The position numbers and the translations under genes were made by a program. Under the pieces are notes generated by a model, which ran no database searches, had not been told where the DNA came from, and worked only from the letters and a program-made list of their open reading frames with translations. Shown here piece by piece: positions 22,069 through 49,646 of a stretch of 64,000 nt of DNA. Location: sequence record MK773491.1, one strand, 5' to 3'. Within the stretch, counting starts at the first letter, position 1. Each line of letters starts with the position of its first letter.

Positions 22069-22554
22069 ATGTCTTTATCTAAAGATATTGAATTCGCGTA
22101 TCAGGTTCTGCGTATTCGTAATGAAATGATTAGCGATGAAATCTGCAATAAACTTCCGGTGGGATGGACGTTCGGGGCAAACTTTCAAATTAAATCTTAT
22201 TTCTATAGATTTAAAAATTATCGTGGTCATAGACTTTTCGGGGATGTTAATTCTCTTCATTATAACATTGATTCACAAACTTCTTTCATAAGCAATATGT
22301 CATTTTTGTATATAGCCGATAGCAATGTTGTTTCGTTTGCATATAAAGAGAAAGATATTCCCATCGTGGAATTTACTGAAGAATTATACTTTCAATATAG
22401 TTTGTTGTACTCAGATAAAGAACTTCGCTGGTTAGTTGTTGCAAGCATACTTTATAATAATCCAATTAAAAATTGTAAGCGTTTTAAGATTCGTTTAGAT
22501 TATATTCAAATATTAACAAAACTTTTGAGGTATTCAGACTATGGCATCATATGA
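22069..22554 (+). CDS. FQ-motif paralog (ELYFQYSLLY)
   Basis: Start moved to ATG 22069 after GGGGGAAG; motif in C-terminal third. Confidence 0.85.
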   Translation: MSLSKDIEFAYQVLRIRNEMISDEICNKLPVGWTFGANFQIKSYFYRFKNYRGHRLFGDVNSLHYNIDSQTSFISNMSFLYIADSNVVSFAYKEKDIPIVEFTEELYFQYSLLYSDKELRWLVVASILYNNPIKNCKRFKIRLDYIQILTKLLRYSDYGII

Positions 22555-23104
22555 TGATGATTTACAATATGCAAAAGATATACTTCGCATTCGTCAAGCA
22601 CTTTATGACGGGACTCTTGTTTCTGGGGAATCATCAATTATTACTTCTTCCCAAACGGTGACGATGCACGATATAACTTACGAAATAGATACAATAACTC
22701 AACAAAAACTCGCGAACCATAATGGATTTAACTATTATATTCATCTTGCGAAACATAAAGAGGATCGTCATCGCCATGTTTTTGGACACATTCGCGAAGA
22801 AACAACAGATGCCGCAAGCGTTCTTACTTCTAAGTTTATACGGTTGATTACTTCTAAACCACAGATGTTACTAGGTGATGTAATGAGTGCGTTGCTTGGA
22901 AAAGGTGTAGAGATGGACTTATCCGAAGATTACACGGAAGAAAGACACTTTCAAGACAGCTTGTTGTACTCAATCGAACAAGTTAAAGGTATCGTGGTTG
23001 CTCATTACTTATACAAACACCCACTACCAGAATACAATTGCTTTAAGATTTTCTTCCATCATATTCCAACTATCTTGAAGATACTTGACGAAAAGGAAAA
23101 ATAA
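22541..23104 (+). CDS. FQ-motif paralog (ERHFQDSLLY)
   Basis: Coupled ORF, motif. Confidence 0.85.
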   Translation: MASYDDDLQYAKDILRIRQALYDGTLVSGESSIITSSQTVTMHDITYEIDTITQQKLANHNGFNYYIHLAKHKEDRHRHVFGHIREETTDAASVLTSKFIRLITSKPQMLLGDVMSALLGKGVEMDLSEDYTEERHFQDSLLYSIEQVKGIVVAHYLYKHPLPEYNCFKIFFHHIPTILKILDEKEK

Positions 23105-23107
23105 TAA

Positions 23108-23641
23108 ATGAACGATTTCAAAAAACTTGCACATGATATTGTTGAAACTGTGTTGTACTTACGTGAATGTCACAAAAATCGCGTTGTTAATTTTGTGACT
23201 ATTGATTCCATGTGTTATCTCATTGAGCGGCAGATATCACCACATAGGCGTGGGATGGTATTTGCAGCAGATGATGGCATGGAAATCTATTTCGACTTCG
23301 AGCCAGCAGGTGAGATTGATTTACCATCTAAACCATATGAAGAACAACATTCAAGTAGATTCTTTACTGAACATGGGTTCCTATATTATCACCCATCATT
23401 ACCGTACTTTAATGCAGTTCCTTCACTAGAAGATGAAACTAAAAATTTAGTTGTTCCGTTGCCTTCACGGTTACTAAACGAAGATGAAATTTTTCAATAT
23501 ATGACAATACTCTCCCCAGATGAAATCTTTGCATTACAATTAACTAACTATATGAAACACATTACCGCACCAGCAGTTGGGATTACATTTAGAAACCTAA
23601 ATGAGAGTCGTAGAATGATGAACTTTAAAAAGGTATTATAA
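23108..23641 (+). CDS. FQ-motif paralog (DEIFQYMTIL)
   Basis: Coupled ORF, motif. Confidence 0.85.
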   Translation: MNDFKKLAHDIVETVLYLRECHKNRVVNFVTIDSMCYLIERQISPHRRGMVFAADDGMEIYFDFEPAGEIDLPSKPYEEQHSSRFFTEHGFLYYHPSLPYFNAVPSLEDETKNLVVPLPSRLLNEDEIFQYMTILSPDEIFALQLTNYMKHITAPAVGITFRNLNESRRMMNFKKVL

Positions 23642-24238
23642 ATGTTTGATATGAAAAATGAAACTAATATGGTTGAAGGATGTAAACAGATTGAACACAT
23701 CTTGAAATTCATGTTGACTTTCGATAATGCTGTATATAATCTAGAATTTATCGGTACTGAGGGTTCTGGTATGAAATATAAAATCAATGATGACTTTATT
23801 ATTTGGAATAGCTTAAATGAAGTTAACATACTCTATAATGATAATAAAGATGATACATATGGTGGTGGATTATGCTACAGTATTCGTTCATTTAAGAAAG
23901 ATGATATCACAGCAATGCGTTCTTTTTACAATGACGATTATTATGTAGAATTCATATACTTCAATTCGGAATATAACGGAGAAATAGAAATTCAAATTGA
24001 AGGTAAGGATGAAATCGTGTTTTCATACCCAGAATACGATTTAGAAACTGATGACGGAGCATTCCAATACTCCTGTTTGTACTCTAATGATATAGTGAAC
24101 ATCCAAACTATCAATCAATATTTCTATAAACGTAAAGCGAAACCTTTTAGTGTTTGGCTCTCATTACCTATCACTAAACTATATAGGATACTAGATGAAC
24201 AATTTAACATTTCCAGAGAAGATAGTACTATTAATTGA
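23642..24238 (+). CDS. FQ-motif paralog (DGAFQYSCLY)
   Basis: Coupled ORF, motif. Confidence 0.85.
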   Translation: MFDMKNETNMVEGCKQIEHILKFMLTFDNAVYNLEFIGTEGSGMKYKINDDFIIWNSLNEVNILYNDNKDDTYGGGLCYSIRSFKKDDITAMRSFYNDDYYVEFIYFNSEYNGEIEIQIEGKDEIVFSYPEYDLETDDGAFQYSCLYSNDIVNIQTINQYFYKRKAKPFSVWLSLPITKLYRILDEQFNISREDSTIN

Positions 24239-24716
24239 GTACTTCTACAATGATCCAGAAAAATTAGCTCATTCTCTAGGGACTAAAGTATATTCACACT
24301 TAAATCAAGATCAAGATTCAGCATATGACCAGACTGAAAGGGAATTCTATGAGATATGCCAAAACGGTACTTACCTTCTTATAGCTGGAGAGTATAATAA
24401 CGCATGGGTTAATGAAAGATACATTGATGATGGTAACTACCCATGTGATTTAGTATTCTATGCACCAAACCCAGATAATGGTACTAGTAACATTCTATAT
24501 ATGACAAATCATAAATTGGGTCTTGTCCAAGAAGAGTTCGGTACTAAAAACATGGATATCTATACTGAAGAGAAGTTATTTCAGTACAGTACAATATACC
24601 CAGAGTTCGTTACAGAATCATTGGAATGGTGGAAGGTATTTGTAAAATCTAAAATACCCTTCAGGATAAATTTAACGTTACTAGACATAGATAAATCCCT
24701 AGAGGTGTACTTATGA
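24195..24716 (+). CDS. FQ-motif paralog (EKLFQYSTIY)
   Basis: Coupled ORF, motif. Confidence 0.85.
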   Translation: MNNLTFPEKIVLLIEYFYNDPEKLAHSLGTKVYSHLNQDQDSAYDQTEREFYEICQNGTYLLIAGEYNNAWVNERYIDDGNYPCDLVFYAPNPDNGTSNILYMTNHKLGLVQEEFGTKNMDIYTEEKLFQYSTIYPEFVTESLEWWKVFVKSKIPFRINLTLLDIDKSLEVYL

Positions 24717-25252
24717 CGTATACTTACGAATATACAATGAACTATACTGAATCTTTATTTGAATTAGCTGAGTACTTAATGATGCTATCTAAAAGATCAG
24801 GAATGATTAGTTTATCACAAGTGAGAAGAAAATCTACGACAGTGTTGCATATAGAAAGAAATGTATTTGATTATGGTGATATTGAGACACGCTTTTGGTA
24901 TCATGGTCAAGAGATACTAAATGATTTTACAATGGCTAAGTCTAATGAAAATTCTTTTACTGTATATTACTCACAAAATAACGTTTCGTATTGTAGTACA
25001 TTAGTGGATGATACAATGGAATTCAGTGATGCTAACACAGTACAAGATACTCGTATCAATATTCTCAGTACTGGAGAACTAACAGAAGAAATGTATGAAC
25101 AATTACAATTTATTCATAAACCAGAACTTGTTCATTCATTATTTGTGATATCTAAGATGCATAATGATTGTAAGATGCTTGCATACTCACAAAATGAAGA
25201 GAGTGGTTCTCCTTCTGAGATATTAGAAGCACTAAGGAAGATATATGATTAA
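24713..25252 (+). CDS. Divergent FQ-family paralog (EEMYEQLQFIH)
   Basis: Same size and motif position; degenerate motif. Confidence 0.75.
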   Translation: MTYTYEYTMNYTESLFELAEYLMMLSKRSGMISLSQVRRKSTTVLHIERNVFDYGDIETRFWYHGQEILNDFTMAKSNENSFTVYYSQNNVSYCSTLVDDTMEFSDANTVQDTRINILSTGELTEEMYEQLQFIHKPELVHSLFVISKMHNDCKMLAYSQNEESGSPSEILEALRKIYD

Positions 25253-25748
25253 AGAGAATGAGTTTGAAGAAGCGTATTCAGTACTGTTATCTATCTTTGA
25301 GATTACTGATAGAGTGCAGAAATGTAGATACAGACATAAGATGCCTAGATGTTTTGCATTTGAGAGTGCATGGAGTTTATTATATGTTACTTCTGGCAAT
25401 GAAGAAAATAGAGTGAAGTTGCGTTCTTTGACTAACAAGTATTCATTTATTATGTATGAAGGACACCGCAAAGCAAATGTCTCTTTGAAATTCTGTTATG
25501 ACAATGGAAATAGTATTCGTATTGGTCATGAGTACTTTGAGCTATCAGACTTCACAGAGGAAGCAATATTTCAGTACAGTACAATGTGGGATGCTGAAAT
25601 GATAACCGATTTGTACTTTTACTTATTTTTGAAGTCAAAGGGTTTAAAGCAGAATTTTAGTTTAAGAGAGGGTGCATACAGTCTTTCAGGATTAAAAGAA
25701 ATATTAGAACATATTCAAGAGTGCGAGGCTCATATAATTTATGATTGA
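25245..25748 (+). CDS. FQ-motif paralog (EAIFQYSTMW)
   Basis: Coupled ORF, motif. Confidence 0.85.
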   Translation: MIKENEFEEAYSVLLSIFEITDRVQKCRYRHKMPRCFAFESAWSLLYVTSGNEENRVKLRSLTNKYSFIMYEGHRKANVSLKFCYDNGNSIRIGHEYFELSDFTEEAIFQYSTMWDAEMITDLYFYLFLKSKGLKQNFSLREGAYSLSGLKEILEHIQECEAHIIYD

Positions 25749-26265
25749 AGAAAAACATTACGAATACGCAAGGTCATTGATTTGGATAGAGAAACTATTT
25801 CAAGAGTTACAAATGAAGATGCCCGGTAAATTCTTGAAGTACTCACCTTTGATGTTCTCATTAGAACTCGATAAGACGGATTGTATATGGTATAACGATA
25901 CCCCTGTTATCGATTTTAAGGTTGCTTGGGGAGAAGATTCTTTTAATACAAATTATTTGTGGGCCGCTGAGAACGACAGTCGCGAGCGTAGTATAATTAT
26001 TATTGCACCGAATACAAAGGTATACATGGCGAATGTCGATAGAAATACAAATGGCACGGAGTACATTTTAGATTTCGATGATAGTGAATCCTTTGTATTT
26101 CAGATGCAGTTAGTACAGAAAAGTATGTGGGATGAATTTTGTATATTATACGCATTGCATGAATTAGGATTTAGTCGTCCTGCATTTATACACGTTTGGA
26201 GTCAGCAAGTATTAGATATCATCATTAACAAAATGGAGGATATTATTAGATATGACGTTATCTGA
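25741..26265 (+). CDS. FQ-motif paralog (SFVFQMQLVQ)
   Basis: Coupled ORF, motif. Confidence 0.8.
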   Translation: MIEEKHYEYARSLIWIEKLFQELQMKMPGKFLKYSPLMFSLELDKTDCIWYNDTPVIDFKVAWGEDSFNTNYLWAAENDSRERSIIIIAPNTKVYMANVDRNTNGTEYILDFDDSESFVFQMQLVQKSMWDEFCILYALHELGFSRPAFIHVWSQQVLDIIINKMEDIIRYDVI

Positions 26266-26812
26266 ACAATACGACAATCGTAGGGTATATGATTATTGTA
26301 CTATGATGATGGAAATAATTTCGAATCTTATTACGTGCTCATTGATGGATACCGAAAAAATGAGGTTCACCCGTTACCCATCAGGTCGAGTATATTACAA
26401 GAATAAAATACGGAACGCAGAAAACAAGTTATTCAATTTTGGTACAGTTCTAGAAGGTTCGTATCCAGAATATAGAAGTCAAGTTTCGATGAGTAAAGAC
26501 CCGGATAATCATTATTTTAAAATAGAATATTTTGATAATAATGTAACGACCTTACCAGTACAAGTAGAGGTGGACGGAATATATCAAGATATACAAATGT
26601 ACACACCAGAAGAATTAGTTAATGATGCTTATATGTTTCAGCAGTCATTAGTGCTTGACGAACCGATGCTGTTTGGGTTATTATGTTTATCAATTTTGCG
26701 GTTCATTGGTGTACGTAATATGCACATTATATGTGAATTTACAGTACAAGATATGACCGCAGTATATGAGGATTATTTAAATGCCAAACGAAAGTGTGTT
26801 AACATACAATGA
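26252..26812 (+). CDS. FQ-motif paralog (AYMFQQSLVL)
   Basis: Coupled ORF, motif. Confidence 0.85.
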   Translation: MTLSEQYDNRRVYDYCTMMMEIISNLITCSLMDTEKMRFTRYPSGRVYYKNKIRNAENKLFNFGTVLEGSYPEYRSQVSMSKDPDNHYFKIEYFDNNVTTLPVQVEVDGIYQDIQMYTPEELVNDAYMFQQSLVLDEPMLFGLLCLSILRFIGVRNMHIICEFTVQDMTAVYEDYLNAKRKCVNIQ

Positions 26813-27398
26813 GATACAAGAGTGTGCTGATTACATTGAAGAATCTTTGGGATTAATCAAAGACACCCATAATAAGATATTAGAAAGAAGTACAGAACCT
26901 ATGGTATTACGAGTACCAGCATGGGATTTTGACAGTGAAGCCATTTTGAGTTTCAATTATGATACGATTGATAGTTGGCAAGGGGAGTATGGTAGATTTC
27001 ACATTTCATTAGAGCAATTACAAAAAACTATTATTAGATTTAAATGGGATTTTAAACCTTTCCATACACATAATGTAGTAATAGTAACAAAGGATAATTT
27101 GAATACAAATATGTCTCTTAATACAATGCATAAAGATATCACATTCAAGCGTTGGCTTGGTGGTGATGTTTTTTGTACATATGAAATGCTTGATATAACG
27201 AAAGAAGAGACGGAAGGATTTTTATTCCAAGAGAGTTTAGTACAAGAACCTATTATCATCAATACATTAATGTTCATGTACGAGTGGCACAGGCGTAAGG
27301 GTATTAATATGCAATTACGTTTCAGTACAGATCCGTTGAAGGAATGTAAGGGTATATTAAACATTGTTAAATTAGCGAGAGAGATGCATGGATATTAG
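26781..27398 (+). CDS. FQ-motif paralog (GFLFQESLVQ)
   Basis: Coupled ORF, motif. Confidence 0.85.
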   Translation: MPNESVLTYNEIQECADYIEESLGLIKDTHNKILERSTEPMVLRVPAWDFDSEAILSFNYDTIDSWQGEYGRFHISLEQLQKTIIRFKWDFKPFHTHNVVIVTKDNLNTNMSLNTMHKDITFKRWLGGDVFCTYEMLDITKEETEGFLFQESLVQEPIIINTLMFMYEWHRRKGINMQLRFSTDPLKECKGILNIVKLAREMHGY

Positions 27399-28050
27399 TA
27401 CATTACATCGTTTAATACAGGCATACAAAGCATTGCCTAATATGGATAAAGTAAATGTGGGTAATTTCATTAATGAGGGTGTACCGTATGGTATTCGCAT
27501 CATTAAGCGTAGATTCAATTCCGAGTACAGTCAGGAGTTAGAATTTGGTGCAATACAGATTGAGATGCCATCATTGAGTGGTAAATTGTATGTACCTATT
27601 ATGGATTTCAGGGTAAATCATCCGAGTAAATTCAAGAGTGTATCTCCTATATTGAACATTGACCCGCATTGGATTGGTATACAGTTCAGTCAGGAGTGCA
27701 TAGAAGAGTTTGCTGATAATGTAATAGTGCTTGCTAACACGAGGTTCGAGGGTAAGTCGATTACATTTGAGTTGAGTGGTACAGAAGAAGAGTGTTTTGA
27801 TACGTTAGAAAGTTCATTGTTCCAGCACAATGTATCCTGTCCAGAGAATGAGGTATTAGATTCCGATATTGTATTGAGTCGTTTTAATTTAGGCAATCAG
27901 TACATTAAAAGTACATTAGGATTTGAGGGTGAATGTGTTAATAGTTTAGAGATAATGACGCCAACCTTGACAGTACGAAGAGGATATGATATGATTTTGC
28001 CTTACGATGAAATTGCAGAAGTCTTAGAGAATTTTGTGTCACAAAATTGA
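27388..28050 (+). CDS. FQ-motif paralog (SSLFQHNVSC)
   Basis: Coupled ORF, motif. Confidence 0.8.
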   Translation: MDISTLHRLIQAYKALPNMDKVNVGNFINEGVPYGIRIIKRRFNSEYSQELEFGAIQIEMPSLSGKLYVPIMDFRVNHPSKFKSVSPILNIDPHWIGIQFSQECIEEFADNVIVLANTRFEGKSITFELSGTEEECFDTLESSLFQHNVSCPENEVLDSDIVLSRFNLGNQYIKSTLGFEGECVNSLEIMTPTLTVRRGYDMILPYDEIAEVLENFVSQN

Positions 28051-28201
28051 GGTTTTGGAAATAATAAATAAATGTTTTACATCGGGGAATAGGCGTCCCG
28101 GTATGCTAAAAAAATTTTCGCTTCACAAAGTGAAAAATAAAGTATAAAATAAGGTATAAACGGGGGCCACCGGGCGACGGTGTGTATAGATTGATTTTAT
28201 A

Positions 28202-28774
28202 TTGGAGTTTATTTTGACATTCAAAGATAGATTTAAAGATTTTTCCAGATTAGAACTTATTGAGTACTGCAAAAAGATTCTTGGTCTATCTAAGTTTCTT
28301 CAAGATAACTACACTGAATGTGTAGAGTACTTCGATATTGATACTAATAATGGAGATCATGTTCGTATTCGAGATGTATATCATGGTGATGTATGGTTTT
28401 CCTTCTATTCTGATTATAGATATCGTTTAGTACAAAACACGTTAGTACAGATGCAATTGACTGCTAATATTTCATCATCTTCAGTACTCTATGATAGATC
28501 AGAAGCATATCCTAGCGGGAAGACTGGTTTTGAGTTTTCACGCATTATGAATATAACAATACCTTGTTGGTCACATATTTGTACTGAAGAATTATTCTTT
28601 CAAGAATCACTATTATTAGATACGTATACATTTAATATTAATTTCGTGTACTCATTCTTAAAAGAATATGGAAATGGGGCATTTACTATTGAGTTGGATG
28701 AAGTTGAAGAGAAGCATGATATTTTAATGCAGCACAACAAATATAAGGATTTCTATGAATCTATCAGACTATAG
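28202..28774 (+). CDS. FQ-motif paralog (ELFFQESLLL); start uncertain
   Basis: Motif; TTG start in the track. Confidence 0.8.
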   Translation: MEFILTFKDRFKDFSRLELIEYCKKILGLSKFLQDNYTECVEYFDIDTNNGDHVRIRDVYHGDVWFSFYSDYRYRLVQNTLVQMQLTANISSSSVLYDRSEAYPSGKTGFEFSRIMNITIPCWSHICTEELFFQESLLLDTYTFNINFVYSFLKEYGNGAFTIELDEVEEKHDILMQHNKYKDFYESIRL

Positions 28775-29363
28775 ATATGAAGACTGGATGAACATTAAGG
28801 CAGTGGCTTTAGTACTAAGAGACATTTCGGATCACTATGCCTATTCAGTCACAGGTTCAATTGATAAAGTACTATACGATAATGGTCACTTTAAGATTTC
28901 ACTGTACACCAGTAGTATTGTTATTCAGAAAAATGTTGAGGATGTATTAAGAGAAAGATCATTTATCCTAGGTGTTAATACTGAAGAAGGTGATGACAAA
29001 CGTCCGTACAGTGCACGCTTACACAAAGAATCAGATAGATTTACTGTTCGCAATTCGGACAGTAATAGTATTTTGTACGTTGATAATAATAACTGGTGGT
29101 TCCGTGATGTTCGCGGTGATGAAGTGTATCTTGATGTACTTGAAAGTACTGATAAAGAATCTTTAGAGCTTGAAGTATTTCAGAAGAGTTTAATATATAC
29201 TGAACCCGAAATGAATGCTATGATCATGAACTATCTATTACGTAACACACTAATAAGTAATGAAAGTAGTAAAATATACCTAGGCTATACTAATACATTG
29301 CATCATATTTTAGATGCATATCAGTACTTAGAGGATATCCAAAAAAAATGTTTGAAAGATTAG
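28755..29363 (+). CDS. FQ-motif paralog (LEVFQKSLIY)
   Basis: Coupled ORF, motif. Confidence 0.85.
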   Translation: MNLSDYRYEDWMNIKAVALVLRDISDHYAYSVTGSIDKVLYDNGHFKISLYTSSIVIQKNVEDVLRERSFILGVNTEEGDDKRPYSARLHKESDRFTVRNSDSNSILYVDNNNWWFRDVRGDEVYLDVLESTDKESLELEVFQKSLIYTEPEMNAMIMNYLLRNTLISNESSKIYLGYTNTLHHILDAYQYLEDIQKKCLKD

Positions 29364-29887
29364 AGTACATTAAAAAGTTGATAGATATGATGATTTACAT
29401 TCATAGTAATCACATACATCTTACCAGACCATTATCTAAAAATGTTAGCATATCATCGAAGCTATATGATAATGCACTTGCGACAACAATTATTGATAAA
29501 TTAGATCAGTGGTTTGTTATGGCCTGTCATGATTATGTTGGACAGCCTATAACAGAAAATACGATATTCTACTGTGATAATAGTTTTGGTAGTGGACACG
29601 TTCAGTGCACTATGCATTCATCATATATAGCAGATCAACGAGGTATTGCACACACAGAAAGTGAGATTACATTACCAGTACTTGATTTTCTTGAAGAATC
29701 ATCATTATTTCAGTACAGTACAATGTACAATGATTATCATCTATTCTTTATGTGGGTTGAATGTGCATATCATGATGTACTTCCTAAGAACTTTTATATG
29801 TCATTGAACGCCACAAAGTTGCTTGGTATGAGTGTAGAGTACTTGAAGGAATCGGTAAACATCATTGAACAAGAGTTGAATTATTGA
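29348..29887 (+). CDS. FQ-motif paralog (SSLFQYSTMY)
   Basis: Coupled ORF, motif. Confidence 0.85.
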   Translation: MFERLEYIKKLIDMMIYIHSNHIHLTRPLSKNVSISSKLYDNALATTIIDKLDQWFVMACHDYVGQPITENTIFYCDNSFGSGHVQCTMHSSYIADQRGIAHTESEITLPVLDFLEESSLFQYSTMYNDYHLFFMWVECAYHDVLPKNFYMSLNATKLLGMSVEYLKESVNIIEQELNY

Positions 29888-29943
29888 TTGACAAGGGCGG
29901 TGTATAATGTTACACTGCCCTTTCTTGTTATTAGGAGGGTTCT

Positions 29944-30498
29944 ATGGACAACCGAGTTTTTAATGAAATGAAGCGTTTCGCGGTGATGATTGATAATGAG
30001 TGGGATGAATTACAGTTCAGGAAAGAGACAGTCATAGATATTGGTAATGATTATGTTCTGACGAAGTGTGTTCATTCTGATGTGGAAAAGATTATACTTC
30101 AAAAGAAACGTCCGTACACTGTTATTAATTTAAATGTTATAACATTTTGTCGTGCACCGATGTTTTTACCTAAAGAGCCGAACAGGTTAGATCGTGGTGA
30201 GTTTATATCACTTACAAGTGATTCACCAATATGTGAAATGTTTTTATCGGACTCGGTAAGTATTCCATACGACAGAACATGTTCCGTAGATGAGCGTAAA
30301 ATGTCGGTGGACTTAACAGTTGATGATGATATGATGCGTCAATTCATGCATGTGGTCATTGACTATCAGGAACATAATTTCAAGAATCTCACGCACTGCG
30401 TTTATGAATTTGATTATTCAGTTGACTTTGCATCAGGTTGCGTGTATGATATTATTACATCCAGACCATTATTCAGAAAATATGGAGTACTGAAATGA
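29944..30498 (+). CDS. Hypothetical protein within the FQ array (no clear motif)
   Basis: Own promoter, AGGAGG RBS. Confidence 0.8.
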   Translation: MDNRVFNEMKRFAVMIDNEWDELQFRKETVIDIGNDYVLTKCVHSDVEKIILQKKRPYTVINLNVITFCRAPMFLPKEPNRLDRGEFISLTSDSPICEMFLSDSVSIPYDRTCSVDERKMSVDLTVDDDMMRQFMHVVIDYQEHNFKNLTHCVYEFDYSVDFASGCVYDIITSRPLFRKYGVLK

Positions 30499-31142
30499 AT
30501 CACAACACACTTTTCAAACACTATCGTATTCTCAAGCACTTAGTAGAATGTAGTAAAAAACTAGATCAATCTGCTGGTAATCCTGAAATCAAATTCAAGA
30601 TGATGTGGGAACTAGGTGAATTTGATGAAAAGGTTATTCGGTTACATTACGCTAAAGATAATGCATCAATCCAAATGTCAATAATCGATCCGATTAAGCA
30701 TGATATAAAAAGAATTGTTAAAATTCGCATGGCCCACAACAACCATTACTATGATAAGAAGAATTATCTTTCGTACAATGGTAATGGTTTTACAATTAAC
30801 GGTTCGGACAAAATTCGTTATACTGAATTGAATGCACATGAACACATTTTACTTGATCCCCTACCACTAGAGACTGCTGGTTCATTAGTACTTCGCGATT
30901 CGTTAGAAGAGATTGATTTCCAGTACAACACACTATACAACTTCACTGGTAATGCATTTCAGATGTACTGTATCTTTAGTATGTTGTTCCATATTGATAA
31001 TATTACGAAACCTTTTTACATGAATTCTGGAGAAGAAGCATTGATGAATGTAGAATTATCAATGAATATTCCAGAAAATATTATTGATGACCTTGCAGTA
31101 CGTGTTGAAGAATTCCATAAGAAACTACATGAGGATTTGTAA
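30495..31142 (+). CDS. FQ-motif paralog (EIDFQYNTLY)
   Basis: Coupled ORF, motif. Confidence 0.85.
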   Translation: MNHNTLFKHYRILKHLVECSKKLDQSAGNPEIKFKMMWELGEFDEKVIRLHYAKDNASIQMSIIDPIKHDIKRIVKIRMAHNNHYYDKKNYLSYNGNGFTINGSDKIRYTELNAHEHILLDPLPLETAGSLVLRDSLEEIDFQYNTLYNFTGNAFQMYCIFSMLFHIDNITKPFYMNSGEEALMNVELSMNIPENIIDDLAVRVEEFHKKLHEDL

Positions 31143-31648
31143 TGAATAAGCACTTGCACGTAATCAAAGAATTAGAAAAGATAATGGATGCATGTCATTT
31201 TGAATCCAAAACCTTCAATAAGAGGTATCCTTCTGATTTTTGTATTACAGTTGATTGCAGAGAAGAATACCCACGTGCAAGTATTTTTACTATGCCTAAT
31301 ATAGAAACAATCTATTACATTAGTAAAGTACCTACTAAGAATAGTCTTTGCTATTGTCATCCCAAAAAAGCATCGTGTTTATCTTTAAACAGTGTTGATG
31401 TATTACAAATCGGCAGTGATACTGTTATCGATTTGGAGCCTATCAATTTACTTGAAGATAATTCAGATAAGCTATTCCAGATGAGTACTTTATTCCCTAA
31501 CTTCATAGTTGAGTCATGGGCGGTTATTTCTCATTTACGTTTCGGTGATTCAGACATTGAAGGTTTAGTCATTAGTGATATTAGTGATGAACATTATAAT
31601 AATGTACTAGAACTTCTAGAACAAGCAAAAGGTGATATACATGAGTGA
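31142..31648 (+). CDS. FQ-motif paralog (DKLFQMSTLF)
   Basis: Coupled ORF, motif. Confidence 0.85.
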   Translation: MNKHLHVIKELEKIMDACHFESKTFNKRYPSDFCITVDCREEYPRASIFTMPNIETIYYISKVPTKNSLCYCHPKKASCLSLNSVDVLQIGSDTVIDLEPINLLEDNSDKLFQMSTLFPNFIVESWAVISHLRFGDSDIEGLVISDISDEHYNNVLELLEQAKGDIHE

Positions 31649-32177
31649 AATCAATCCAGTATTTGAATTGGTTTGTAAAATTAAAACAATTCGCGATTAT
31701 CAACGTTGTGCTACACATTATAAGTACTTTCCAAAATTTGAAAAAGGTGACTTTGCAATTCATGCATTTGAACTTGATGCTCTTGAGATAAAACAGATAA
31801 GTACTAACTTCCCAATCATGTGCATAAATGATATCAATACGGTACTTGAATACGAAAACAACCATCGTGATCAAAATAATGAAGACAGATATACTTTCTT
31901 TTGGCGGCGGTCAAGTGGGGATGATATCGAAAGGGCTGATACTTCTAAATTTTCATTACCTTTGTTTGATGGTACTAACTATGACGAAGTAGAATTCAAT
32001 GCTGATATGCTTGTAGTTAATTCATTACCTGTAGTACTTTGCACTCTATTAAAAGAGTACAGTAAAGAAACTAATACCATATATTTGGGTCGTTTTACAT
32101 ATGATGATGTACATACAATTAATAATCTATTAGATGAGGCAATAGAATGGATCAACAAAAGTACACAAGCATCTTAA
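31641..32177 (+). CDS. Divergent FQ-family paralog (DEVEFNADMLV)
   Basis: Coupled ORF, degenerate motif. Confidence 0.75.
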   Translation: MSEINPVFELVCKIKTIRDYQRCATHYKYFPKFEKGDFAIHAFELDALEIKQISTNFPIMCINDINTVLEYENNHRDQNNEDRYTFFWRRSSGDDIERADTSKFSLPLFDGTNYDEVEFNADMLVVNSLPVVLCTLLKEYSKETNTIYLGRFTYDDVHTINNLLDEAIEWINKSTQAS

Positions 32178-32740
32178 TGGCGTTATTACATTTATTGAAG
32201 AAACATGATGAAATGAATACTTATTTCGATTCTGAAATTTCTTTTATGCACAATTCAGAATGTATTACTGTGCAATTAAATTGTGATGAATATGCTACTG
32301 CTATGTCAGTTAAATTCGATTCGAAAAATCTCATACGAATTCGTCTTGTTAATTGGTGCAGATTACATAATAGTACTGAATCAGAGGCATTGGATGATTT
32401 TAGTAATATCAATATGTCTTCTAGAGAATCAAGCGATTCCAGTTCGTTAAATTGCATTACACTCAATCCAGAAAAGATTAAGTTGTATATTCAAGGTTTC
32501 AAGAACCATTTAGTAGATTATAATAATATAGAGAGTGAACATTTCCAGATTAGTACAATAGAAGATATTCCAGATTTGGAACAATATCAGTACATGAGAA
32601 AAATGTATGATTTTTATAGTTCTTTATTGCCACAATTTGTTGGTTTGAATATTCAGTACATTAAAGATGAAAAATATAATAATTGTGATTTTATAGATTT
32701 CATCACTAAGAAAATTTGGGGGTTGATTGCATTATCATGA
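32147..32740 (+). CDS. FQ-motif paralog (SEHFQISTIE)
   Basis: Coupled ORF, motif. Confidence 0.85.
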   Translation: MDQQKYTSILMALLHLLKKHDEMNTYFDSEISFMHNSECITVQLNCDEYATAMSVKFDSKNLIRIRLVNWCRLHNSTESEALDDFSNINMSSRESSDSSSLNCITLNPEKIKLYIQGFKNHLVDYNNIESEHFQISTIEDIPDLEQYQYMRKMYDFYSSLLPQFVGLNIQYIKDEKYNNCDFIDFITKKIWGLIALS

Positions 32741-33381
32741 AAACGATTTACGAAAAGGCAGAGAAGTTTTGTGGATATCTTAAAGATATTGTGTACATGA
32801 TGCGTTTCTATCAGGATCATTATGTTAGATTGAATAATTATAAAAATACATATAACAATACAATGATTCTAAGAAATGCAAATGAAAAAATGCGGTCGTA
32901 TTATTTTAACTTCATGCATGAAGAATTTGGTATCATGAATGCAATCACGACAAATGATATGTACGATAGACTTATCACGATAACCAACTCTAAAAGTCAT
33001 ATAGATAATAACATTAAAGGTGATAGACCGAAATATAATTTTGTTATGTACTACTATGATAAGGTTGAGGATGACATGTGGCCTTTATTTGACATGTTGA
33101 CTAACGGTATTGAATCTGATACAATCAAAGAAACTGAATTTCAAGCCCTGATGTTACATAATGAAGATACTTTACAAAAATACTATATTGCTATTATCAT
33201 GATGGAGACATTAGGTTTATTCAGTGATCTTGATATGCCAGTACCAATATTGGCATTGGGTAGTACTGATATACTGCGGTTCATCCCTGCAAGAAAAGCA
33301 ATGATTGATATGATGACAAAGAAGGTTGGAGATGATTGGAAAACAAAACTTGAAAAGCGTTATGGACATGTTATTAAATGA
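32716..33381 (+). CDS. FQ-motif paralog (ETEFQALMLH); start may be a downstream ATG
   Basis: Coupled ORF, motif. Confidence 0.8.
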   Translation: MGVDCIIMKTIYEKAEKFCGYLKDIVYMMRFYQDHYVRLNNYKNTYNNTMILRNANEKMRSYYFNFMHEEFGIMNAITTNDMYDRLITITNSKSHIDNNIKGDRPKYNFVMYYYDKVEDDMWPLFDMLTNGIESDTIKETEFQALMLHNEDTLQKYYIAIIMMETLGLFSDLDMPVPILALGSTDILRFIPARKAMIDMMTKKVGDDWKTKLEKRYGHVIK

Positions 33382-41755: not shown

Positions 41756-41836
41756 GAGTAAGAATATTCAAGAACGAACGCTAGTGAGTAATTGAATATT
41801 CTTACTCTGAATCATTGAACGTTAGTGAAATGATTC
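41756..41836. repeat. Twin perfect hairpins (16-bp and 8-bp stems) with shared loop GAACGYTAGTGA
   Basis: 41756-41807 and 41809-41836. Confidence 0.85.
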
Positions 41837-41869
41837 GTTGTTTAGTGAATAGAAAAAGAGAAAAACAGA

Positions 41870-42400: not shown

Positions 42401-42407
42401 GATTTAT

Positions 42408-45431: not shown

Positions 45432-45579
45432 ACATTGTCCGTACTGTCAGGTTGAAGTCCAAATTTGGACTGAATGTAGCTACGGAGTAGGTCAAGCTGG
45501 TGGTATTGTCATTGCAAAGACGTATTGTTCTGTATGTGAAGAAAAAATACGTGAAAGAGTTATTGACAAAGATATCTAA
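45409..45579 (+). CDS. Small Zn-ribbon protein (CPYC...CSVC)
   Basis: GAGGA RBS before 45409. Confidence 0.7.
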   Translation: MNEKIETEHCPYCQVEVQIWTECSYGVGQAGGIVIAKTYCSVCEEKIRERVIDKDI

Positions 45580-45625
45580 GTCCACTATAATGTGGACTTT
45601 CTTTTTAATCAAATAAAGGTGTTCT

Positions 45626-46252
45626 ATGACGAGAGAAGAAGCAGCACTGATAAACTTTATGAATATGATCAACTCCATTGCGTTTATGGCTGAAGCATAC
45701 AAGAATGATGATGATTTGAGTTCTTTAGATTTCAAGTTGAGGCGTTACCCTCTTAATTTAATGAATACAAGTGGTGGTTATTCTTTAAAGACAACTCATT
45801 TTCTAGATGATGAAGATGATAAACCATCACACGAAAACTTCTATGTTTATAGTGATATGCCTCGCATCGGATCATACATGTATCCGAAAACAGAACATCT
45901 AGCTAGTATTAATACTTATAATATAACACTACAAAATGGTAAACCAGAAAATATCATTAGTATTGGATTTTGGGAACCTAATAATTGGATTATTCGCATA
46001 GAACATTGTAGTACTGAATTCATTATCAAAAATGAACGTGGTCAAAGTGAAATAATTGATATTACTGATGAAGCACAACTATTTCAGTACTCTCTAATGA
46101 ATCCAACCTATCCAGATTTTCTAACGAAGATTGCATATGAGGGAATTGGACTCATACTGCTTAGTGAGAAATATAATAAAATAATTATGAAAAGTTCTGG
46201 GTGTATTGTAGATTTGGGAATTAAAGATTTTACAAACGAGTTTAAGGAGTAG
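45626..46252 (+). CDS. FQ-motif paralog (AQLFQYSLMN)
   Basis: Own promoter, motif. Confidence 0.85.
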   Translation: MTREEAALINFMNMINSIAFMAEAYKNDDDLSSLDFKLRRYPLNLMNTSGGYSLKTTHFLDDEDDKPSHENFYVYSDMPRIGSYMYPKTEHLASINTYNITLQNGKPENIISIGFWEPNNWIIRIEHCSTEFIIKNERGQSEIIDITDEAQLFQYSLMNPTYPDFLTKIAYEGIGLILLSEKYNKIIMKSSGCIVDLGIKDFTNEFKE

Positions 46253-46284
46253 TAAAGCAGATTTATTCACAAGGAGTGTGAGCG

Positions 46285-47016
46285 ATGTTAGATCGAATTA
46301 AATTTGCACAAGAGTTAGCCAACGAATTGAACATGGCTAGTTTTCAATCATTAAACCCAATCATGGCAGAGTATGCAACTGCGGCAGCTTCGTCTGGGGT
46401 TCAATGTGGACAAGCTAACCTATTGGCTGATGTGTTTAGTGAAGTACAGGGTATGCAATATTCTGTTAAATCATATAAAGACAAGTTCGTTGGTATGTAT
46501 ATGAATGGGGAAGTTGAAGAAGAACGCAGATATACTGATTTTATAATTGAAAGACGTGTGTCTGGTGTATCTAATCCAAATGCTGAACCTGATCTTGTTT
46601 TACAAGAAGTACTACAAGATATTATGGAAAATGAACAGAAAAGTAAAGAGAAGTACAACGTTAGTAGTACTGAAACTGTTCTTCTAGGTTATTCGGAAGA
46701 TGAAAACTATTTTTACTTCAGATTAACAGAAGTTCCATACGTATACGATTTCCCTGCAACTGTTTGCGAGAAGACTTTTACTGAACGTAGTAAGAACTTC
46801 CACAAACACGAAGGGAACAGAAGAAGTATTGATGGGTACAATGAGGATGGTGTACAAATTTACGAATGGGTGCATCCAAACAATTCCACATATACTCGTT
46901 GCTTGAAGAAGCGTTACGATTTACAAGAAGCTGATTCATTTTACTTCAAAATAGAAAAACAAAAATATCAAAGACCCGATGATAGTACTTTACTAGGTAT
47001 GGTATCATTGATGTAA
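46285..47016 (+). CDS. Hypothetical protein
   Basis: AGGAG RBS, 243 aa. Confidence 0.85.
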   Translation: MLDRIKFAQELANELNMASFQSLNPIMAEYATAAASSGVQCGQANLLADVFSEVQGMQYSVKSYKDKFVGMYMNGEVEEERRYTDFIIERRVSGVSNPNAEPDLVLQEVLQDIMENEQKSKEKYNVSSTETVLLGYSEDENYFYFRLTEVPYVYDFPATVCEKTFTERSKNFHKHEGNRRSIDGYNEDGVQIYEWVHPNNSTYTRCLKKRYDLQEADSFYFKIEKQKYQRPDDSTLLGMVSLM

Positions 47017-47067
47017 TTATATGTACACGGTAAATGCCGTGTACTCTTTTTAATATAAGGGTATCCT

Positions 47068-47367
47068 ATGAGCTATAATATCCGAATGGTTCCTAATGAA
47101 GTATGGTTCCAAATTCAAGCAAAGTATGTAGAACATAACACAACAGTGTATAAAAAGCCTGATGGCAAACAATATACTTTACTTGACCATGTTACTGTTG
47201 GTGAAAGTACAATACAATGCACTCAAGAAACTAAGTTTTTGTATAGTGGAATGCACAAATATGAAAGTATATCTGGTGATACTGTATTTTGGATAAAGGC
47301 AACCTTAGATGATATCCATGATATTGTTGAAGAAATAGATTCTATGGGAAGTGATTGGAATAAGTGA
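47068..47367 (+). CDS. Hypothetical protein
   Basis: RBS. Confidence 0.75.
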   Translation: MSYNIRMVPNEVWFQIQAKYVEHNTTVYKKPDGKQYTLLDHVTVGESTIQCTQETKFLYSGMHKYESISGDTVFWIKATLDDIHDIVEEIDSMGSDWNK

Positions 47368-47373
47368 GTTGAT

Positions 47374-47898
47374 ATGCATTATCTTGATAACATTAGAACC
47401 TTGATTAACTTTTATAAAGTACTGAGGGGTATACAACAACATGAACCATTTAATGTAAAACATTATGGTATTGAATGGAAATGGGATGGATCGTATGAAT
47501 TAGAAATAAACAATTCAGGATTTATGTCTACAATTCATCTTCTTGAACCATATAAAAGTAGTACATCAAACACGATATCAGTACTGACTCGTCGTTTGTA
47601 TATTTGTAAGAATAGTAAAAACTTCATGACTGCTATGGGTGGTAATCCTTCAGTACCGACGCATGAACTCACTACCGAAGAAATGCATTTTCAACATAGT
47701 TTAATGTGTGAGTTGCCTGAACTGGAAGAGATTCAACAAGTTTATCAAGGTGCACTAGAATTAGTTGAGAATGGTATATTCTACCGAGGCTCGTATAATG
47801 GGAAGAAATTAAATCCAATTCCTGTTATTAAAAAGATGTTACTTGAAATTGATAATAAGAAAATTGAATCTCACTGGAGACAATATTATGAATTTTGA
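47374..47898 (+). CDS. FQ-motif paralog (EMHFQHSLMC)
   Basis: Motif. Confidence 0.85.
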   Translation: MHYLDNIRTLINFYKVLRGIQQHEPFNVKHYGIEWKWDGSYELEINNSGFMSTIHLLEPYKSSTSNTISVLTRRLYICKNSKNFMTAMGGNPSVPTHELTTEEMHFQHSLMCELPELEEIQQVYQGALELVENGIFYRGSYNGKKLNPIPVIKKMLLEIDNKKIESHWRQYYEF

Positions 47899-48472
47899 GT
47901 TATTCTTCAACGATGTGAAAGAGGCATTTGATGCATTAGATCATTACCGTAATATTGAAAAACAACTTCACCGGATGTGTATTGATGAAAATGGTATACG
48001 TCATAGTCATTCACTTGAGTACGATTGGAGTACAAAAGAACCTTATTATGAAGGTTACCAATATTCAGCATTTATTGATTCATCTGATGCAAGTATTCAA
48101 CATGTATACAACTACAGAATAAGAACAGTAAATCAAGAAAATTTACCACATTCTCAAATATATGTTAGTCCTTCAGGAAAAATCTATTCGTATAGATTTA
48201 TTCCACAGAATATGGATGACTTTATAATTCGTTTTAAAATACAAGCTGGTATACCCGCTGAAGAATATAAAATATCAGAAGTACTAAAAGAAGAAGTATA
48301 TTTTATGTTAAGTACTATAATGGATATACCAAGTATTGAAGATTTTAAAAATTTGTATATTTTTTCACAAAAAGTTCGCCCATTACTTATGCGTGATAAG
48401 ATGGTGATGGAAGGTAGTTTTCCATCAATATTCATACAAAATCATTGCAAAGCTGTCTTAGGTGGTGTATAA
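47888..48472 (+). CDS. FQ-family paralog (EEVYFMLSTIM)
   Basis: Start moved to MNFEL after GGAG; motif. Confidence 0.8.
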   Translation: MNFELFFNDVKEAFDALDHYRNIEKQLHRMCIDENGIRHSHSLEYDWSTKEPYYEGYQYSAFIDSSDASIQHVYNYRIRTVNQENLPHSQIYVSPSGKIYSYRFIPQNMDDFIIRFKIQAGIPAEEYKISEVLKEEVYFMLSTIMDIPSIEDFKNLYIFSQKVRPLLMRDKMVMEGSFPSIFIQNHCKAVLGGV

Positions 48473-49011
48473 TGACTCTTCTAGAAATTATAGAATGCAT
48501 GGAATCATTGTATATTCGTAATCAATCTGAACCAGATTATTTTGATTATGAAAATGAAAGATTCCGAGTATTCACAACGACTTATAAAGTAGGTGTATTT
48601 GATAAGAAATGTATGGATGAAATCATTACAATTTTCGATACTTGTAGATCATCCATCAAAGAATCTTTTCCTTATATGAATACTTTTGATGGATGTGCAT
48701 CTCCAAGATTTTCTATTTCATCATCATTTGAAAGCGATTCATTAGTACTTGATAGATTTGTCAAAGTACCAAACAAACACTTTTATGAAAGTGCTGGTGA
48801 TGTTACTATTTTGAAACTTAAAGAACTTAGTGATGAATATGTATTCCAATTGAGTACTATGTATAATTTGGGGGATATTGAAAACATCAAGAAACTACCT
48901 AAAATACTTCCAGTACTTGGAACATATTGTGATGTGAAGCAACGAAGATTGTTTATTATGAATCGTTACGATTTTGATAATATGCCATTTACCGAGGACA
49001 TGTTTAAATGA
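48472..49011 (+). CDS. FQ-motif paralog (EYVFQLSTMY)
   Basis: TAATG coupling; motif. Confidence 0.85.
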   Translation: MTLLEIIECMESLYIRNQSEPDYFDYENERFRVFTTTYKVGVFDKKCMDEIITIFDTCRSSIKESFPYMNTFDGCASPRFSISSSFESDSLVLDRFVKVPNKHFYESAGDVTILKLKELSDEYVFQLSTMYNLGDIENIKKLPKILPVLGTYCDVKQRRLFIMNRYDFDNMPFTEDMFK

Positions 49012-49646
49012 AAAATATACAACCTTTATTATTCTTTTTTGAATTGGTTAATCAATGGCGGTTCAGTTATGCAGTGGATGTATTCAATTTAAAGCCAACT
49101 AAAAAATACTCAAAAATGTTTGAAGAAATCTATGTTGGGCTTTCTCATCCACAAAGTCAATTTGAAATGTACTACACTAGTAAAAAGAGGACTGGTGCTA
49201 TTGGTTTGTTAGTTGAAGATAAAAGTATAGGACAACCTGTACTCTTTGGTGATCTTCAAGCATTTGGGTATAGAACGGTAATGCATCATGATTGGATGTA
49301 CTTACCAATGGGAACAAATAAAATTGTTTATGCTAATGCTGAAGATATTGAAGTAAATCCAGATATTATGGAAGATGAACATTTTCAGCTAATGATGTTA
49401 CATACATTACCTGAGTTTGAACACATTAAACCTGCAATTGAAGTACACGATTACTTGAAACCAATTGTCCAGAAGCATGATATTGGTTTTGATATTTCAT
49501 ATGAACACTTGAAAACTGATTTTAGCGGTTTTGTTCCGAGTGCTCATGCATTAGATACCATTGATTCTATATATGCAAATGCATTAGAACTATATTACGA
49601 GGCAGAAGAACATGGCAACCCATTCAGTAATTACATTGTATCATAA
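49008..49646 (+). CDS. FQ-motif paralog (DEHFQLMMLH)
   Basis: ATGA coupling; motif. Confidence 0.85.
   Translation: MKNIQPLLFFFELVNQWRFSYAVDVFNLKPTKKYSKMFEEIYVGLSHPQSQFEMYYTSKKRTGAIGLLVEDKSIGQPVLFGDLQAFGYRTVMHHDWMYLPMGTNKIVYANAEDIEVNPDIMEDEHFQLMMLHTLPEFEHIKPAIEVHDYLKPIVQKHDIGFDISYEHLKTDFSGFVPSAHALDTIDSIYANALELYYEAEEHGNPFSNYIVS

What the first reader, a model, noticed from the sequence alone, without database searches (positions are those of the whole stretch)
22069..49646. About 30 hyper-diverged paralogs sharing only an acidic-x-FQ-x-S/T motif, in tandem arrays
Seen: about 25 genes at 22069-36876 (interrupted only by 29944 and an ART-like gene) and 5 more at 45626-49646. All are about 145-220 aa and nearly all overlap stop/start. 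Each carries (E/D)(E/D)xxFQx(S/T/M)(L/T)h roughly 25-75 aa from the C-terminus (FQYSLLY, FQDSLLY, FQYSTIY, FQESLVQ, FQMSTLF, FQISTIE, FQLSLLH, FQHSLMC and others), often after an N-terminal helix such as DIEFAYQVLRI / DLQYAKDILRI / DIEYFKVVQDI. The rest is not alignable by eye. The family takes up about 18 kb of this window. Inference: a variable N-terminal binding domain fused to a conserved docking helix. This could be a diversified effector or anti-defence repertoire that plugs into one common hub, by analogy with poxvirus ANK/PRANC adaptor families (the phage ClpP at 61663 is one candidate hub), or the motif could be a virion-packaging/ejection tag.
Basis: partly seen in the sequence, partly recalled or inferred. 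Interest (0 to 1): 0.86.

Follow-up and report, generated by a model that had tools for sequence, protein, structure and literature searches.

The report
Early tandem gene family in jumbo phage
A Salmonella jumbo phage carries about 26 very diverged copies of one small protein in two tandem operons just inside its terminal repeat; the family is real, found only in this phage group, absent from virions, and of unknown function, most plausibly an early host-interaction repertoire.

Summary
The window is Salmonella phage 7t3 (a Rak2-like jumbo phage). FQx[S/T] occurs in 21 of 48 genes at 22069-49646, against 1.9 expected from shuffles, and in none of 80 other ORFs. Profile searches give 24 firm and 2 probable members with no decoy, not about 30. 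Eight genes inside the arrays are not members. The members share more than the motif: there are conserved columns along the whole length and the same predicted order of helices and strands. Orthologues show purifying selection (pooled dN/dS about 0.16). The family exists only in Rak2-like jumbo phages, with 4-6 copies in CBB, at least 22 in RaK2, 30-33 in EJP2 and 39 in phAPEC6. The array always starts just after the left terminal repeat. Near-consensus sigma-70 promoters head both arrays. Two virion proteome tables and the CBB annotation lack the family, except for one member, so the packaging-tag idea is contradicted. There is no Pfam, PDB or NCBIfam relative and no solved-fold match. My best reading is an early, cytoplasmic multigene family of diversified host-interaction proteins. 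The FQ segment is probably a core element of one fold, not a separate docking helix. The Clp-hub idea is untested. A 121Q array of more than 30 similar genes was noted in one sentence in 2017.

The parts
21995..22040 (+). Hairpin plus T-run (21995-22027) overlapping a sigma-70-type promoter (TTGACA-17-TATACT with TG, 22012-22040). It lies 29 nt before the first member and about 12-57 nt after the position matching the end of the fENko-Kae01 terminal repeat (about 21983).
   Evidence: repeat boundary
22069..24716 (+). Family members 1-5: 22069-22554, 22541-23104, 23108-23641, 23642-24238, 24195-24716
   Evidence: profile E <= 1e-4 with no decoy; leave-one-out E 3e-10 to 0.04; motif in register
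24713..25252 (+). Unassigned gene inside array 1 (179 aa, no FQ motif); possibly a degenerate member
   Evidence: hmmsearch E 0.07; hhalign E 0.019 against best decoy 0.072
25245..27398 (+). Family members 6-9: 25245-25748, 25741-26265 (FQ then Q at the S/T position), 26252-26812, 26781-27398
27388..28050 (+). Unassigned gene (220 aa, no motif). Its 3' end holds a sigma-70-like site at 27967-27995.
28214..29887 (+). Family members 10-12: 28214-28774, 28755-29363, 29348-29887
29888..29922 (+). Intergenic terminator-like hairpin (12 pairs, 29893-29922) overlapping a promoter-like site (29888-29916)
29944..30498 (+). Unassigned gene (184 aa); no similarity to the family and no Pfam or PHROG match
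30495..31648 (+). Family members 13-14: 30495-31142 (FQ then N at the S/T position; joined only in the last search round) and 31142-31648
31641..32177 (+). Unassigned gene (178 aa)
   Evidence: hmmsearch E 0.16; hhalign E 0.25
32147..33919 (+). Family members 15-17: 32147-32740, 32737-33381 (FQ then L at the S/T position), 33332-33919
33916..34320 (+). Non-family gene (134 aa; phrog_11632), 53% identical to its EJP2 counterpart
34292..35496 (+). Family members 18-19: 34292-34924 and 34915-35496
   Evidence: BLAST cluster with 47374; hhalign E 3e-4 for 34292
35514..35978 (+). Non-family gene (154 aa; phrog_15293), 39% identical to its EJP2 counterpart
35947..36876 (+). 35947-36390, a probable member (FQYT only 27 aa from the C-terminus), and 36391-36876, a firm member. 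The orthologue of 36391-36876 is the only member seen in the fENko-Kae01 particle fraction.
   Evidence: proteomics
45563..45591 (+). Perfect 12/12 sigma-70-type promoter, 35 nt before the first gene of array 2
45626..46252 (+). Family member, first gene of array 2
46285..47367 (+). Two non-family genes: 46285-47016 (243 aa; 59-76% identical in the Rak2-like phages outside the 7t3 group, present in all 71 matching records) and 47068-47367
47374..49646 (+). Family members: 47374-47898, 47888-48472 (FM in place of FQ), 48472-49011, 49008-49646. They end at the start of the RNA ligase 1 gene (49612-50763).

Best explanation
The genes form one lineage-specific multigene family of small (about 150-215 aa), soluble, mostly acidic alpha/beta proteins of Rak2-like jumbo phages.

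Shown:
- They are homologous.
- Each has been kept as a 1:1 orthologue under purifying selection.
- They sit in two tightly packed + strand operons that begin right after the left direct terminal repeat.
- They are not virion components.

Inferred (about 0.75): the host sigma-70 RNA polymerase transcribes them early, from near-consensus promoters at 22012-22040 and 45563-45591, and translation of neighbouring genes is coupled through overlapping stops and starts.

Inferred (about 0.45): each paralogue uses one common scaffold to bind a different host or defence target. The scaffold would be an N-terminal amphipathic helix, a variable beta-rich middle, a short helix carrying E-E-x-x-F-Q-x-S, a turn, then helix, strand and helix. 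This would be a phage counterpart of the terminal multigene families of large eukaryotic DNA viruses.

On this reading the FQ segment is mainly a core or hinge element of the fold. Any common binding site would be made by the few conserved polar residues: the Asp at column 84, the acidic residues at 101 and 104, Gln 109 and Ser 111 (numbering of the 22069 protein).
For: Homology:
- Iterative profile search within the window collected 20 members and no decoy. A wider profile gave 24 members at E <= 1e-4; the first decoy scored E 0.58.
- Leave-one-out E-values ranged from 3e-10 to 0.06.
- The window-only profile independently found 24 ORFs at E < 1e-3 in the same two arrays of EJP2. The wider profile found 39 in phAPEC6, 22 in RaK2 and 4-6 in CBB.

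Shared architecture:
- Model of 22069: pTM 0.68. The order is helix 3-20, six strands, helix 104-111 (the motif, pLDDT about 90), helix 116-129, a strand, helix 143-157.
- The 47374 model has the same order of elements.
- BFVD fold hits are only proteins of RaK2, SP27, 121Q and GAP32.
- Conserved columns lie along the whole length.

Functional genes: pooled dN/dS is 0.16 at dS 0.46 against a metagenomic relative with identical gene order and gene lengths; neighbouring genes give 0.11.

Fast long-term divergence: positional orthologues in EJP2 are 26-37% identical or undetectable, while interspersed non-family genes are 39-69% identical.

Early and cytoplasmic:
- An 11/12 and a 12/12 sigma-70 promoter stand directly before the two arrays.
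- 25 such sites fill the adjoining terminal-repeat region.
- The array starts 86 bp after the repeat in fENko-Kae01 and 64 bp after it in CBB.
- The family is absent from the phAPEC6 virion proteome, and only 1 of about 26 orthologues is in the fENko-Kae01 particle fraction.
- Members have negative GRAVY, median pI 5.0 and median net charge -9.5.
Against: - There is no direct expression or interaction data for any member.
- The overall count of promoter-like sites in 20.5-38.5 kb is not above shuffles (97 against 98.6). Only the placement of the best sites is suggestive.
- dN/dS shows ordinary purifying selection, with no gene-wide signal of an arms race.
- Both structural models are of modest or poor confidence: pLDDT 68 and 64, and pTM 0.30 for the second. 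The tools return no coordinates, so whether the F, Q and S residues are buried could not be measured.
- An invariant Phe (100%) and Gln (96%), with three conserved acidic positions, in an otherwise hypervariable family is more than a fold usually needs. This leaves room for a shared ligand, partner or catalytic site.
Confidence: 0.5

Rival explanations
1. Adaptor repertoire on one hub. The conserved FQ-centred site docks every paralogue onto one common machine, for example the phage ClpP at 61663-62340 with its Clp ATPase, or a host complex. The variable part recruits different targets.
For: F is invariant (100%) and Q nearly so (96%), with conserved acidic residues at columns 84, 101 and 104, while everything else varies. 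A true ClpP is encoded 12 kb downstream (PF00574, E 1.3e-42). A ClpA-like ATPase exists in fENko-Kae01.
Against: The motif lies inside the most confidently modelled, helix-packed part of a single domain, not in a flexible tail. Ser and Gln are replaced by Met or Leu in several members, and Ser in all CBB members that carry FQ. ClpP and the family co-occur in every Rak2-like phage checked, so co-occurrence carries no signal. There is no similarity to known adaptor families.
Confidence: 0.15
2. Enzyme family. The conserved Asp, Asp/Glu, Glu, Gln and Ser form one catalytic or metal-binding site, and the paralogues apply the same chemistry to different substrates.
For: Five conserved polar columns stand in an otherwise free-running sequence. 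The fold is a compact alpha/beta unit.
Against: There is no match to any enzyme family in Pfam, NCBIfam or PDB sequences, and no solved-fold match. Members that have Met or Leu in place of Gln or Ser are still under purifying selection. No His, Lys, Arg or Cys column is conserved.
Confidence: 0.1
3. Virion-packaged proteins ejected with the DNA, with the motif serving as a packaging or processing tag.
For: There is a precedent in phages for polymorphic internal proteins that share only a short targeting signal (from general knowledge of the T4 internal proteins). One member, the orthologue of 36391-36876, was detected in the fENko-Kae01 >300 kDa fraction with 12 spectra.
Against: None of gp377c-gp460c is among the 62 virion proteins of purified phAPEC6, although 39 members lie there. 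25 of about 26 orthologues are absent from the fENko-Kae01 table, which does contain many non-structural proteins. No CBB member is annotated as structural. The motif is internal and C-proximal, not an N-terminal leader.
Confidence: 0.03
4. Neutral by-product of tandem duplication that merely fills a larger capsid (the genome-expansion idea of Hua et al. 2017), with no distinct role for each copy.
For: Copy number varies from 4-6 to 39 between genera. Recent duplicates up to 58% identical exist in phAPEC6. The paper reads the 121Q array this way.
Against: Every 7t3 copy has a 1:1 orthologue of the same length, with dN/dS 0.02-0.48, in relatives at dS up to 0.8. There are no stops or frameshifts. 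Paralogues are too old to be found by BLAST, yet they have been retained.
Confidence: 0.07

Closest known systems
[quoted passage not shown] 2017, mBio, PMC5646251)
   Same: Very probably the same family. phAPEC6, stated to be the same species as 121Q, has 39 members in the syntenic place. The genes are tandem, on one strand, and in a Rak2-like phage.
   Different: The paper gives one sentence, with no motif, boundaries, distribution or function. The 7t3 copies are not 'very similar': only 4 of 24 have a BLAST-detectable paralogue.
Terminal multigene families of large eukaryotic DNA viruses (asfarvirus MGFs, poxvirus Bcl-2-like and ANK/PRANC families)
   Same: Many diverged paralogues lie in tandem next to the terminal repeats, copy number differs between lineages, and they are non-structural. 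This is an analogy from general knowledge.
   Different: There is no sequence or domain relation: no ankyrin, PRANC or Bcl-2-like hits. The host is a bacterium, and no function has been shown.
T4-type internal proteins with a shared capsid-targeting leader
   Same: Polymorphic phage proteins that share a short conserved segment.
   Different: In T4 the leader is N-terminal and the proteins are in the virion. Here the motif is internal and the proteins are absent from virion proteomes.
Lineage-specific expansion of about 35 zinc-ribbon genes in Bacillus phage G (Iyer et al. 2021, PMC7824862)
   Same: A paralogue expansion of comparable size in a jumbo phage.
   Different: It is an unrelated domain. 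No Cys or His columns are conserved here.
PHROG families phrog_12674 and phrog_9317
   Same: These are the only library families that link more than one member (4 and 3 of 48 genes scanned).
   Different: PHROGs spreads the matches from these 48 genes over 31 families, nearly all matched by a single gene and of unknown function. No library treats the set as one family.

Membership tests
Jumbo-phage tandem paralogue array (as noted for 121Q) | Many homologous genes, head to tail on one strand | tested here: met
   24-26 members in two + strand arrays; 22 of 26 junctions overlap or abut
Jumbo-phage tandem paralogue array (as noted for 121Q) | Same family present at the syntenic place in 121Q-type phages | tested here: met
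   39 ORFs at E < 1e-3 in phAPEC6 gp377c-gp460c and 30-33 in EJP2, both upstream of RNA ligase 1
Poxvirus-type ANK/PRANC adaptors | N-terminal ankyrin repeats and a C-terminal F-box-like PRANC domain | tested here: not met
   No Ank or PRANC match in Pfam scans of all 48 genes, or of 54 family sequences at E up to 10
Poxvirus-type ANK/PRANC adaptors | Binding of all members to one common hub | not testable with these tools
   No interaction data are available, and no complex prediction tool was on hand
Virion-packaged internal proteins with a targeting tag | Presence in purified virions | tested here: not met
   Absent from the phAPEC6 virion table; 1 of about 26 detected in the fENko-Kae01 particle fraction
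Virion-packaged internal proteins with a targeting tag | Short N-terminal leader removed by the prohead protease | tested here: not met
   The conserved segment lies 45-87 residues from the C-terminus in the 24 firm members (27 in the probable member 35947). Processing itself could not be tested.
ADP-ribosyltransferase (the 'ART-like gene' in the finding) | Match to an ART-clan family or its catalytic motif pattern | tested here: not met
   No ART family at E <= 0.01 in 48 genes. The only trace is a 14-residue DUF3990 hit at E 0.095 in 33916-34320.
Known anti-phage defence proteins (PADLOC) or NCBIfam families | Profile match | tested here: not met
   The significant matches are the Dam methylase and the cytidylyltransferase of the region. 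A few further single-gene hits at E 0.001-0.01 are too weak to count. No family member gives a credible match.
Any solved fold | Foldseek or sequence-profile match to the PDB | tested here: not met
   Best Foldseek E 2.9, TM 0.18; best profile E 3.9. Caveat: model pLDDT is 68.
ClpP (candidate hub gene at 61663-62340) | CLP_protease domain | tested here: met
   PF00574, E 1.3e-42. This says nothing about any link to the family.

The most novel reading that the evidence does not exclude
The FQ-centred site, with its conserved acidic residues, is a common docking surface. Through it, 6 to 40 paralogous early proteins per phage would plug different host or defence proteins into a single machine, such as the phage-encoded Clp protease or a host complex. 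That would be a bacteriophage adaptor repertoire built on a fold with no solved relative.
Probability: 0.12. Interest if true: 0.85.

Novelty: new member of a known kind. Interest (0 to 1): 0.55.

Why it matters
Rak2-like jumbo phages (71 records in the phage collection) devote about 4-5% of their genome to this one family, yet it has no name, no Pfam entry, no solved or recognisable fold and no assigned function. PHROGs splits it into many single-gene families. Recognising it as one family turns some 25-40 'hypothetical proteins' per genome into a single defined question. It also provides a profile for annotation. Finally, it points to the first genes after the terminal repeat as a conserved early module whose copy number differs between genera infecting different hosts. 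If the paralogues prove to be counter-defence or host-takeover factors, this would be among the largest such repertoires known in a phage.

Tried and rejected
1. BLAST all-against-all links only 6 genes in two triplets. This is why the family looks like a bare motif; profiles were needed.

2. A second AlphaFold model (47374, 54-row alignment) was poor (pTM 0.30). Its BFVD search gave nothing usable.

3. A profile search of PDB sequences gave nothing. Pfam at E up to 10 over 54 sequences gave 19 different single hits and no recurrent family.

The word-indexed protein search returned only 7 and 10 hits, all on contigs typical of about 350-kb phages or short fragments.

5. Single-sequence hhalign could not settle 24713, 27388, 29944, 31641 or 35514.

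6. The extra EJP2 array at 39-43 kb gave only Prob 19% against the family.

7. A DNA-level element was rejected, because synonymous codons vary at the invariant residues.

8. A pseudogene graveyard was rejected by dN/dS.

9. A DNA-mimic reading: members are acidic (median pI 5.0), but not significantly more so than other phage proteins (median 5.6, p = 0.05), so it was not pursued.

10. Slip, declared as required. Both readings fit poorly: the residue after the Gln is variable and often bulky, and the segment is modelled as folded, not as a free peptide.

Full report
**Source and setting.** The window is 100% identical to Salmonella phage 7t3 (MK773491; window position = record position - 62000). 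It is about 99% identical to phages SE_PL, PHA46, Munch and Klebsiella phage fENko-Kae01, which are jumbo myoviruses of about 350 kb in the Rak2-like group. Every gene at 22069-49646 is annotated 'hypothetical protein', except a Dam methylase and a cytidylyltransferase (mislabelled in the 7t3 record). The RNA ligase 1 gene follows, starting at 49612.

**Check of the observation.**
- FQx[ST] occurs in 21 of the 48 genes of the region. In 2000 shuffles the mean was 1.87, sd 1.36 and maximum 7. It occurs in none of the 52 other + strand ORFs or 28 - strand ORFs.
- With the preceding acidic residue the count is 22 against 0.69 expected.
- The motif lies 45-74 residues from the C-terminus in 19 of the 21 genes.
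- 22 of 26 junctions in the first array overlap or abut.
- Codons at the invariant residues vary synonymously, so selection acts on the protein.

**Is it a family or only a motif?**
- BLAST links just six genes.
- An iterative profile search inside the window grew from 3 to 20 genes without picking up any of 80 control ORFs. Leave-one-out E-values run from 3e-10 to 0.06.
- I then added relatives from EJP2 and from a scan of 1.84 billion representative proteins, which found only 45 clusters at E <= 0.001. With that profile, 24 window genes reach E <= 1e-4. The first decoy or shuffled sequence appears at E 0.58.
- 34292 is added by BLAST and by hhalign (E 3e-4). 35947 is added as probable.
- 24713, 27388, 29944 and 31641 stay unassigned.
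- 33916, 35514 and 46285 are different genes that are well conserved between genera (39-69% identity to EJP2). 47068 is also not a member, though it has no clear EJP2 counterpart. 36923, just past the array, is likewise conserved (59%).
- The family therefore has about 26 members and covers about 13.5-14.6 kb.
- Conservation is not confined to the motif. In 81 non-redundant sequences, numbered on the 22069 protein: F108 is 100%, Q109 96%, S111 78%, E104 80% (90% acidic), position 101 83% acidic, D84 77%, an aromatic at 139 98%, and L128 69%. Hydrophobic positions recur along the N-terminal helix.

**Structure.**
- AlphaFold2 on 22069, using the 20 paralogues as its alignment, gave pLDDT 68 and pTM 0.68. 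The order of elements is helix 3-20, a low-confidence six-stranded part, helix 104-111 (the motif, block pLDDT about 90), helix 116-129, a strand, and helix 143-157.
- A model of 47374 was poor (pTM 0.30) but showed the same order of elements, with the motif again inside a helix.
- Foldseek found no solved structure (best E 2.9).
- In BFVD the matches below E of about 0.1 are uncharacterised proteins. The named ones come from RaK2, SP27 and 121Q, with GAP32 further down the list.
- Pfam, NCBIfam, PADLOC and PDB sequence searches gave nothing for the family.
- PHROGs spreads the 48 genes of the region over 31 families, nearly all matched by a single gene.
- The T/S/D-E-E start of the motif fits an ordinary helix N-cap with acidic first-turn residues. 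The D/S/T after the L-h-Y fits the N-cap of the next helix. This is an inference from general helix-capping rules.

**Distribution and evolution.**
- The window-derived profile finds the same two arrays in Asteriusvirus EJP2. One runs from 9.4 to 31 kb. The other, at 43.9-47.7 kb, ends at the RNA ligase gene. Together they hold 30-33 members.
- phAPEC6 has 39 members, including short forms of about 105-125 aa. RaK2 has at least 22, and CBB only 4-6 (CBB_53-58).
- In fENko-Kae01 the first member starts 86 bp after the 19,736-bp direct terminal repeat. In CBB it starts 64 bp after the 22,456-bp repeat.
- Metagenomic relatives (L006-L008) have exactly the same gene order and lengths. Per-gene dN/dS in the family is 0.02-0.48. 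The pooled value is 0.16 at dS 0.46, against 0.11 for neighbouring genes.
- Within orthologue pairs the middle part differs at 12.8% of positions, the motif segment at 6.3%, the N-terminal helix at 10.0% and the C-terminal part at 9.7%.
- Over the longer distance to EJP2, positional orthologues of members are 26-37% identical or undetectable, while interspersed non-family genes keep 39-69%.
- Only 4 of 24 members in 7t3 have a BLAST-detectable paralogue, against 21 of 39 in phAPEC6, where identity reaches 58%.
- So the duplications in the 7t3 lineage are old. The copies are each maintained, they evolve fast without losing constraint, and copy number has changed between genera.

**Expression and location.**
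- An 11/12 sigma-70-type promoter with an extended -10 stands 29 nt before the first gene. It overlaps a terminator-like hairpin at the repeat boundary.
- A 12/12 promoter stands 35 nt before the second array.
- A strong hairpin plus promoter separates 29887 from 29944.
- The adjoining terminal-repeat region holds 25 such sites in intergenic gaps.
- The total count of weaker promoter-like sites in the array is not above chance.
- The 62-protein virion proteome of purified phAPEC6 contains no product of gp377c-gp460c.
- The fENko-Kae01 particle-fraction table lists only CDS_077, the orthologue of 36391-36876, among about 26 orthologues.
- Members have negative GRAVY, median pI 5.0 and median charge -9.5.

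**Interpretation.**
- Best supported: an early, cytoplasmic multigene family on one scaffold, most plausibly a repertoire of host-interaction or counter-defence proteins with one target per paralogue.
- The hub-adaptor version cannot be excluded, because the invariant Phe-Gln and the conserved acidic positions exceed what a fold usually needs.
- Against the hub version, the motif is modelled inside the packed core, and Ser or Gln are replaced by Met or Leu in some members and in CBB.
- The packaging-tag reading is contradicted by the proteomes.
- A catalytic reading has no support from any library.

**Prior knowledge.**
- Hua et al. [quoted passage not shown]
- The RaK2 and CBB genome papers mention BLAST-level paralogues in general terms.
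- The 2021 comparative survey of jumbo phages and the 2026 review do not describe this family.
- I found no paper that defines the family, its motif or its position next to the repeat.

Noticed in passing
window 15865-16116 (+): An 83-aa gene in the terminal-repeat early region matches the ParE-like toxin domain (PF24732, E 1.4e-12). It is 100% conserved in a metagenomic relative. No partner gene was examined.
   Followed up: partly
window about 1500-19600 (+): 25 sigma-70-type sites with at least 11 of 12 matches. All lie outside the ORFs of 80 aa or more, and many sit within about 60 nt of the next such ORF. This stretch corresponds to the 19.7-kb direct terminal repeat of fENko-Kae01 (window about 2248-21983).
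   Followed up: partly
window 46285-47016 (+): A 243-aa gene of unknown function inside array 2 is found in all 71 Rak2-like jumbo phage records and is 59-76% identical outside the 7t3 group. It is far better conserved than the family around it and makes a useful synteny anchor.
   Followed up: partly
L004 8125-11635 (EJP2 record 39124-42634): A further tandem set of six genes of about 175-190 aa without the FQ motif, absent from the 7t3 window. hhalign against the family gives only Prob 19%, E 1.2e-3, over 20 columns at the motif region. A relation is possible but unresolved.
   Followed up: partly
L005 (phAPEC6 record about 299200-309200), L003 16811-18253 (EJP2), L009 (RaK2 record about 257800-263800): Short forms of the family (about 105-140 aa) keep the motif and the C-terminal part but lack much of the N-terminal or middle region. 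None is present in the 7t3 window.
   Followed up: no
window 37399-37551 and 36923-37396 (+): A 50-aa gene matches DUF7230 (E 1.1e-18). The 157-aa gene before it is 59% identical to its EJP2 counterpart. Its orthologue (CDS_078) has 2 spectra in the fENko-Kae01 table.
   Followed up: no
window 22000-50000 against 1-22000: G+C is lower in the arrays (0.31-0.34) than in most of the terminal-repeat region (about 0.35-0.41), and GC skew stays positive throughout the + strand coding region.
   Followed up: no
7t3 record annotation at window 42931-43467: The gene annotated 'ribonucleotide reductase A' in MK773491 matches cytidylyltransferase families instead (phrog_3041, TIGR00125). It is annotated as a nucleotidyl- or cytidylyltransferase in fENko-Kae01, EJP2, RaK2 and CBB, so the 7t3 label is probably a mis-annotation.
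   Followed up: partly
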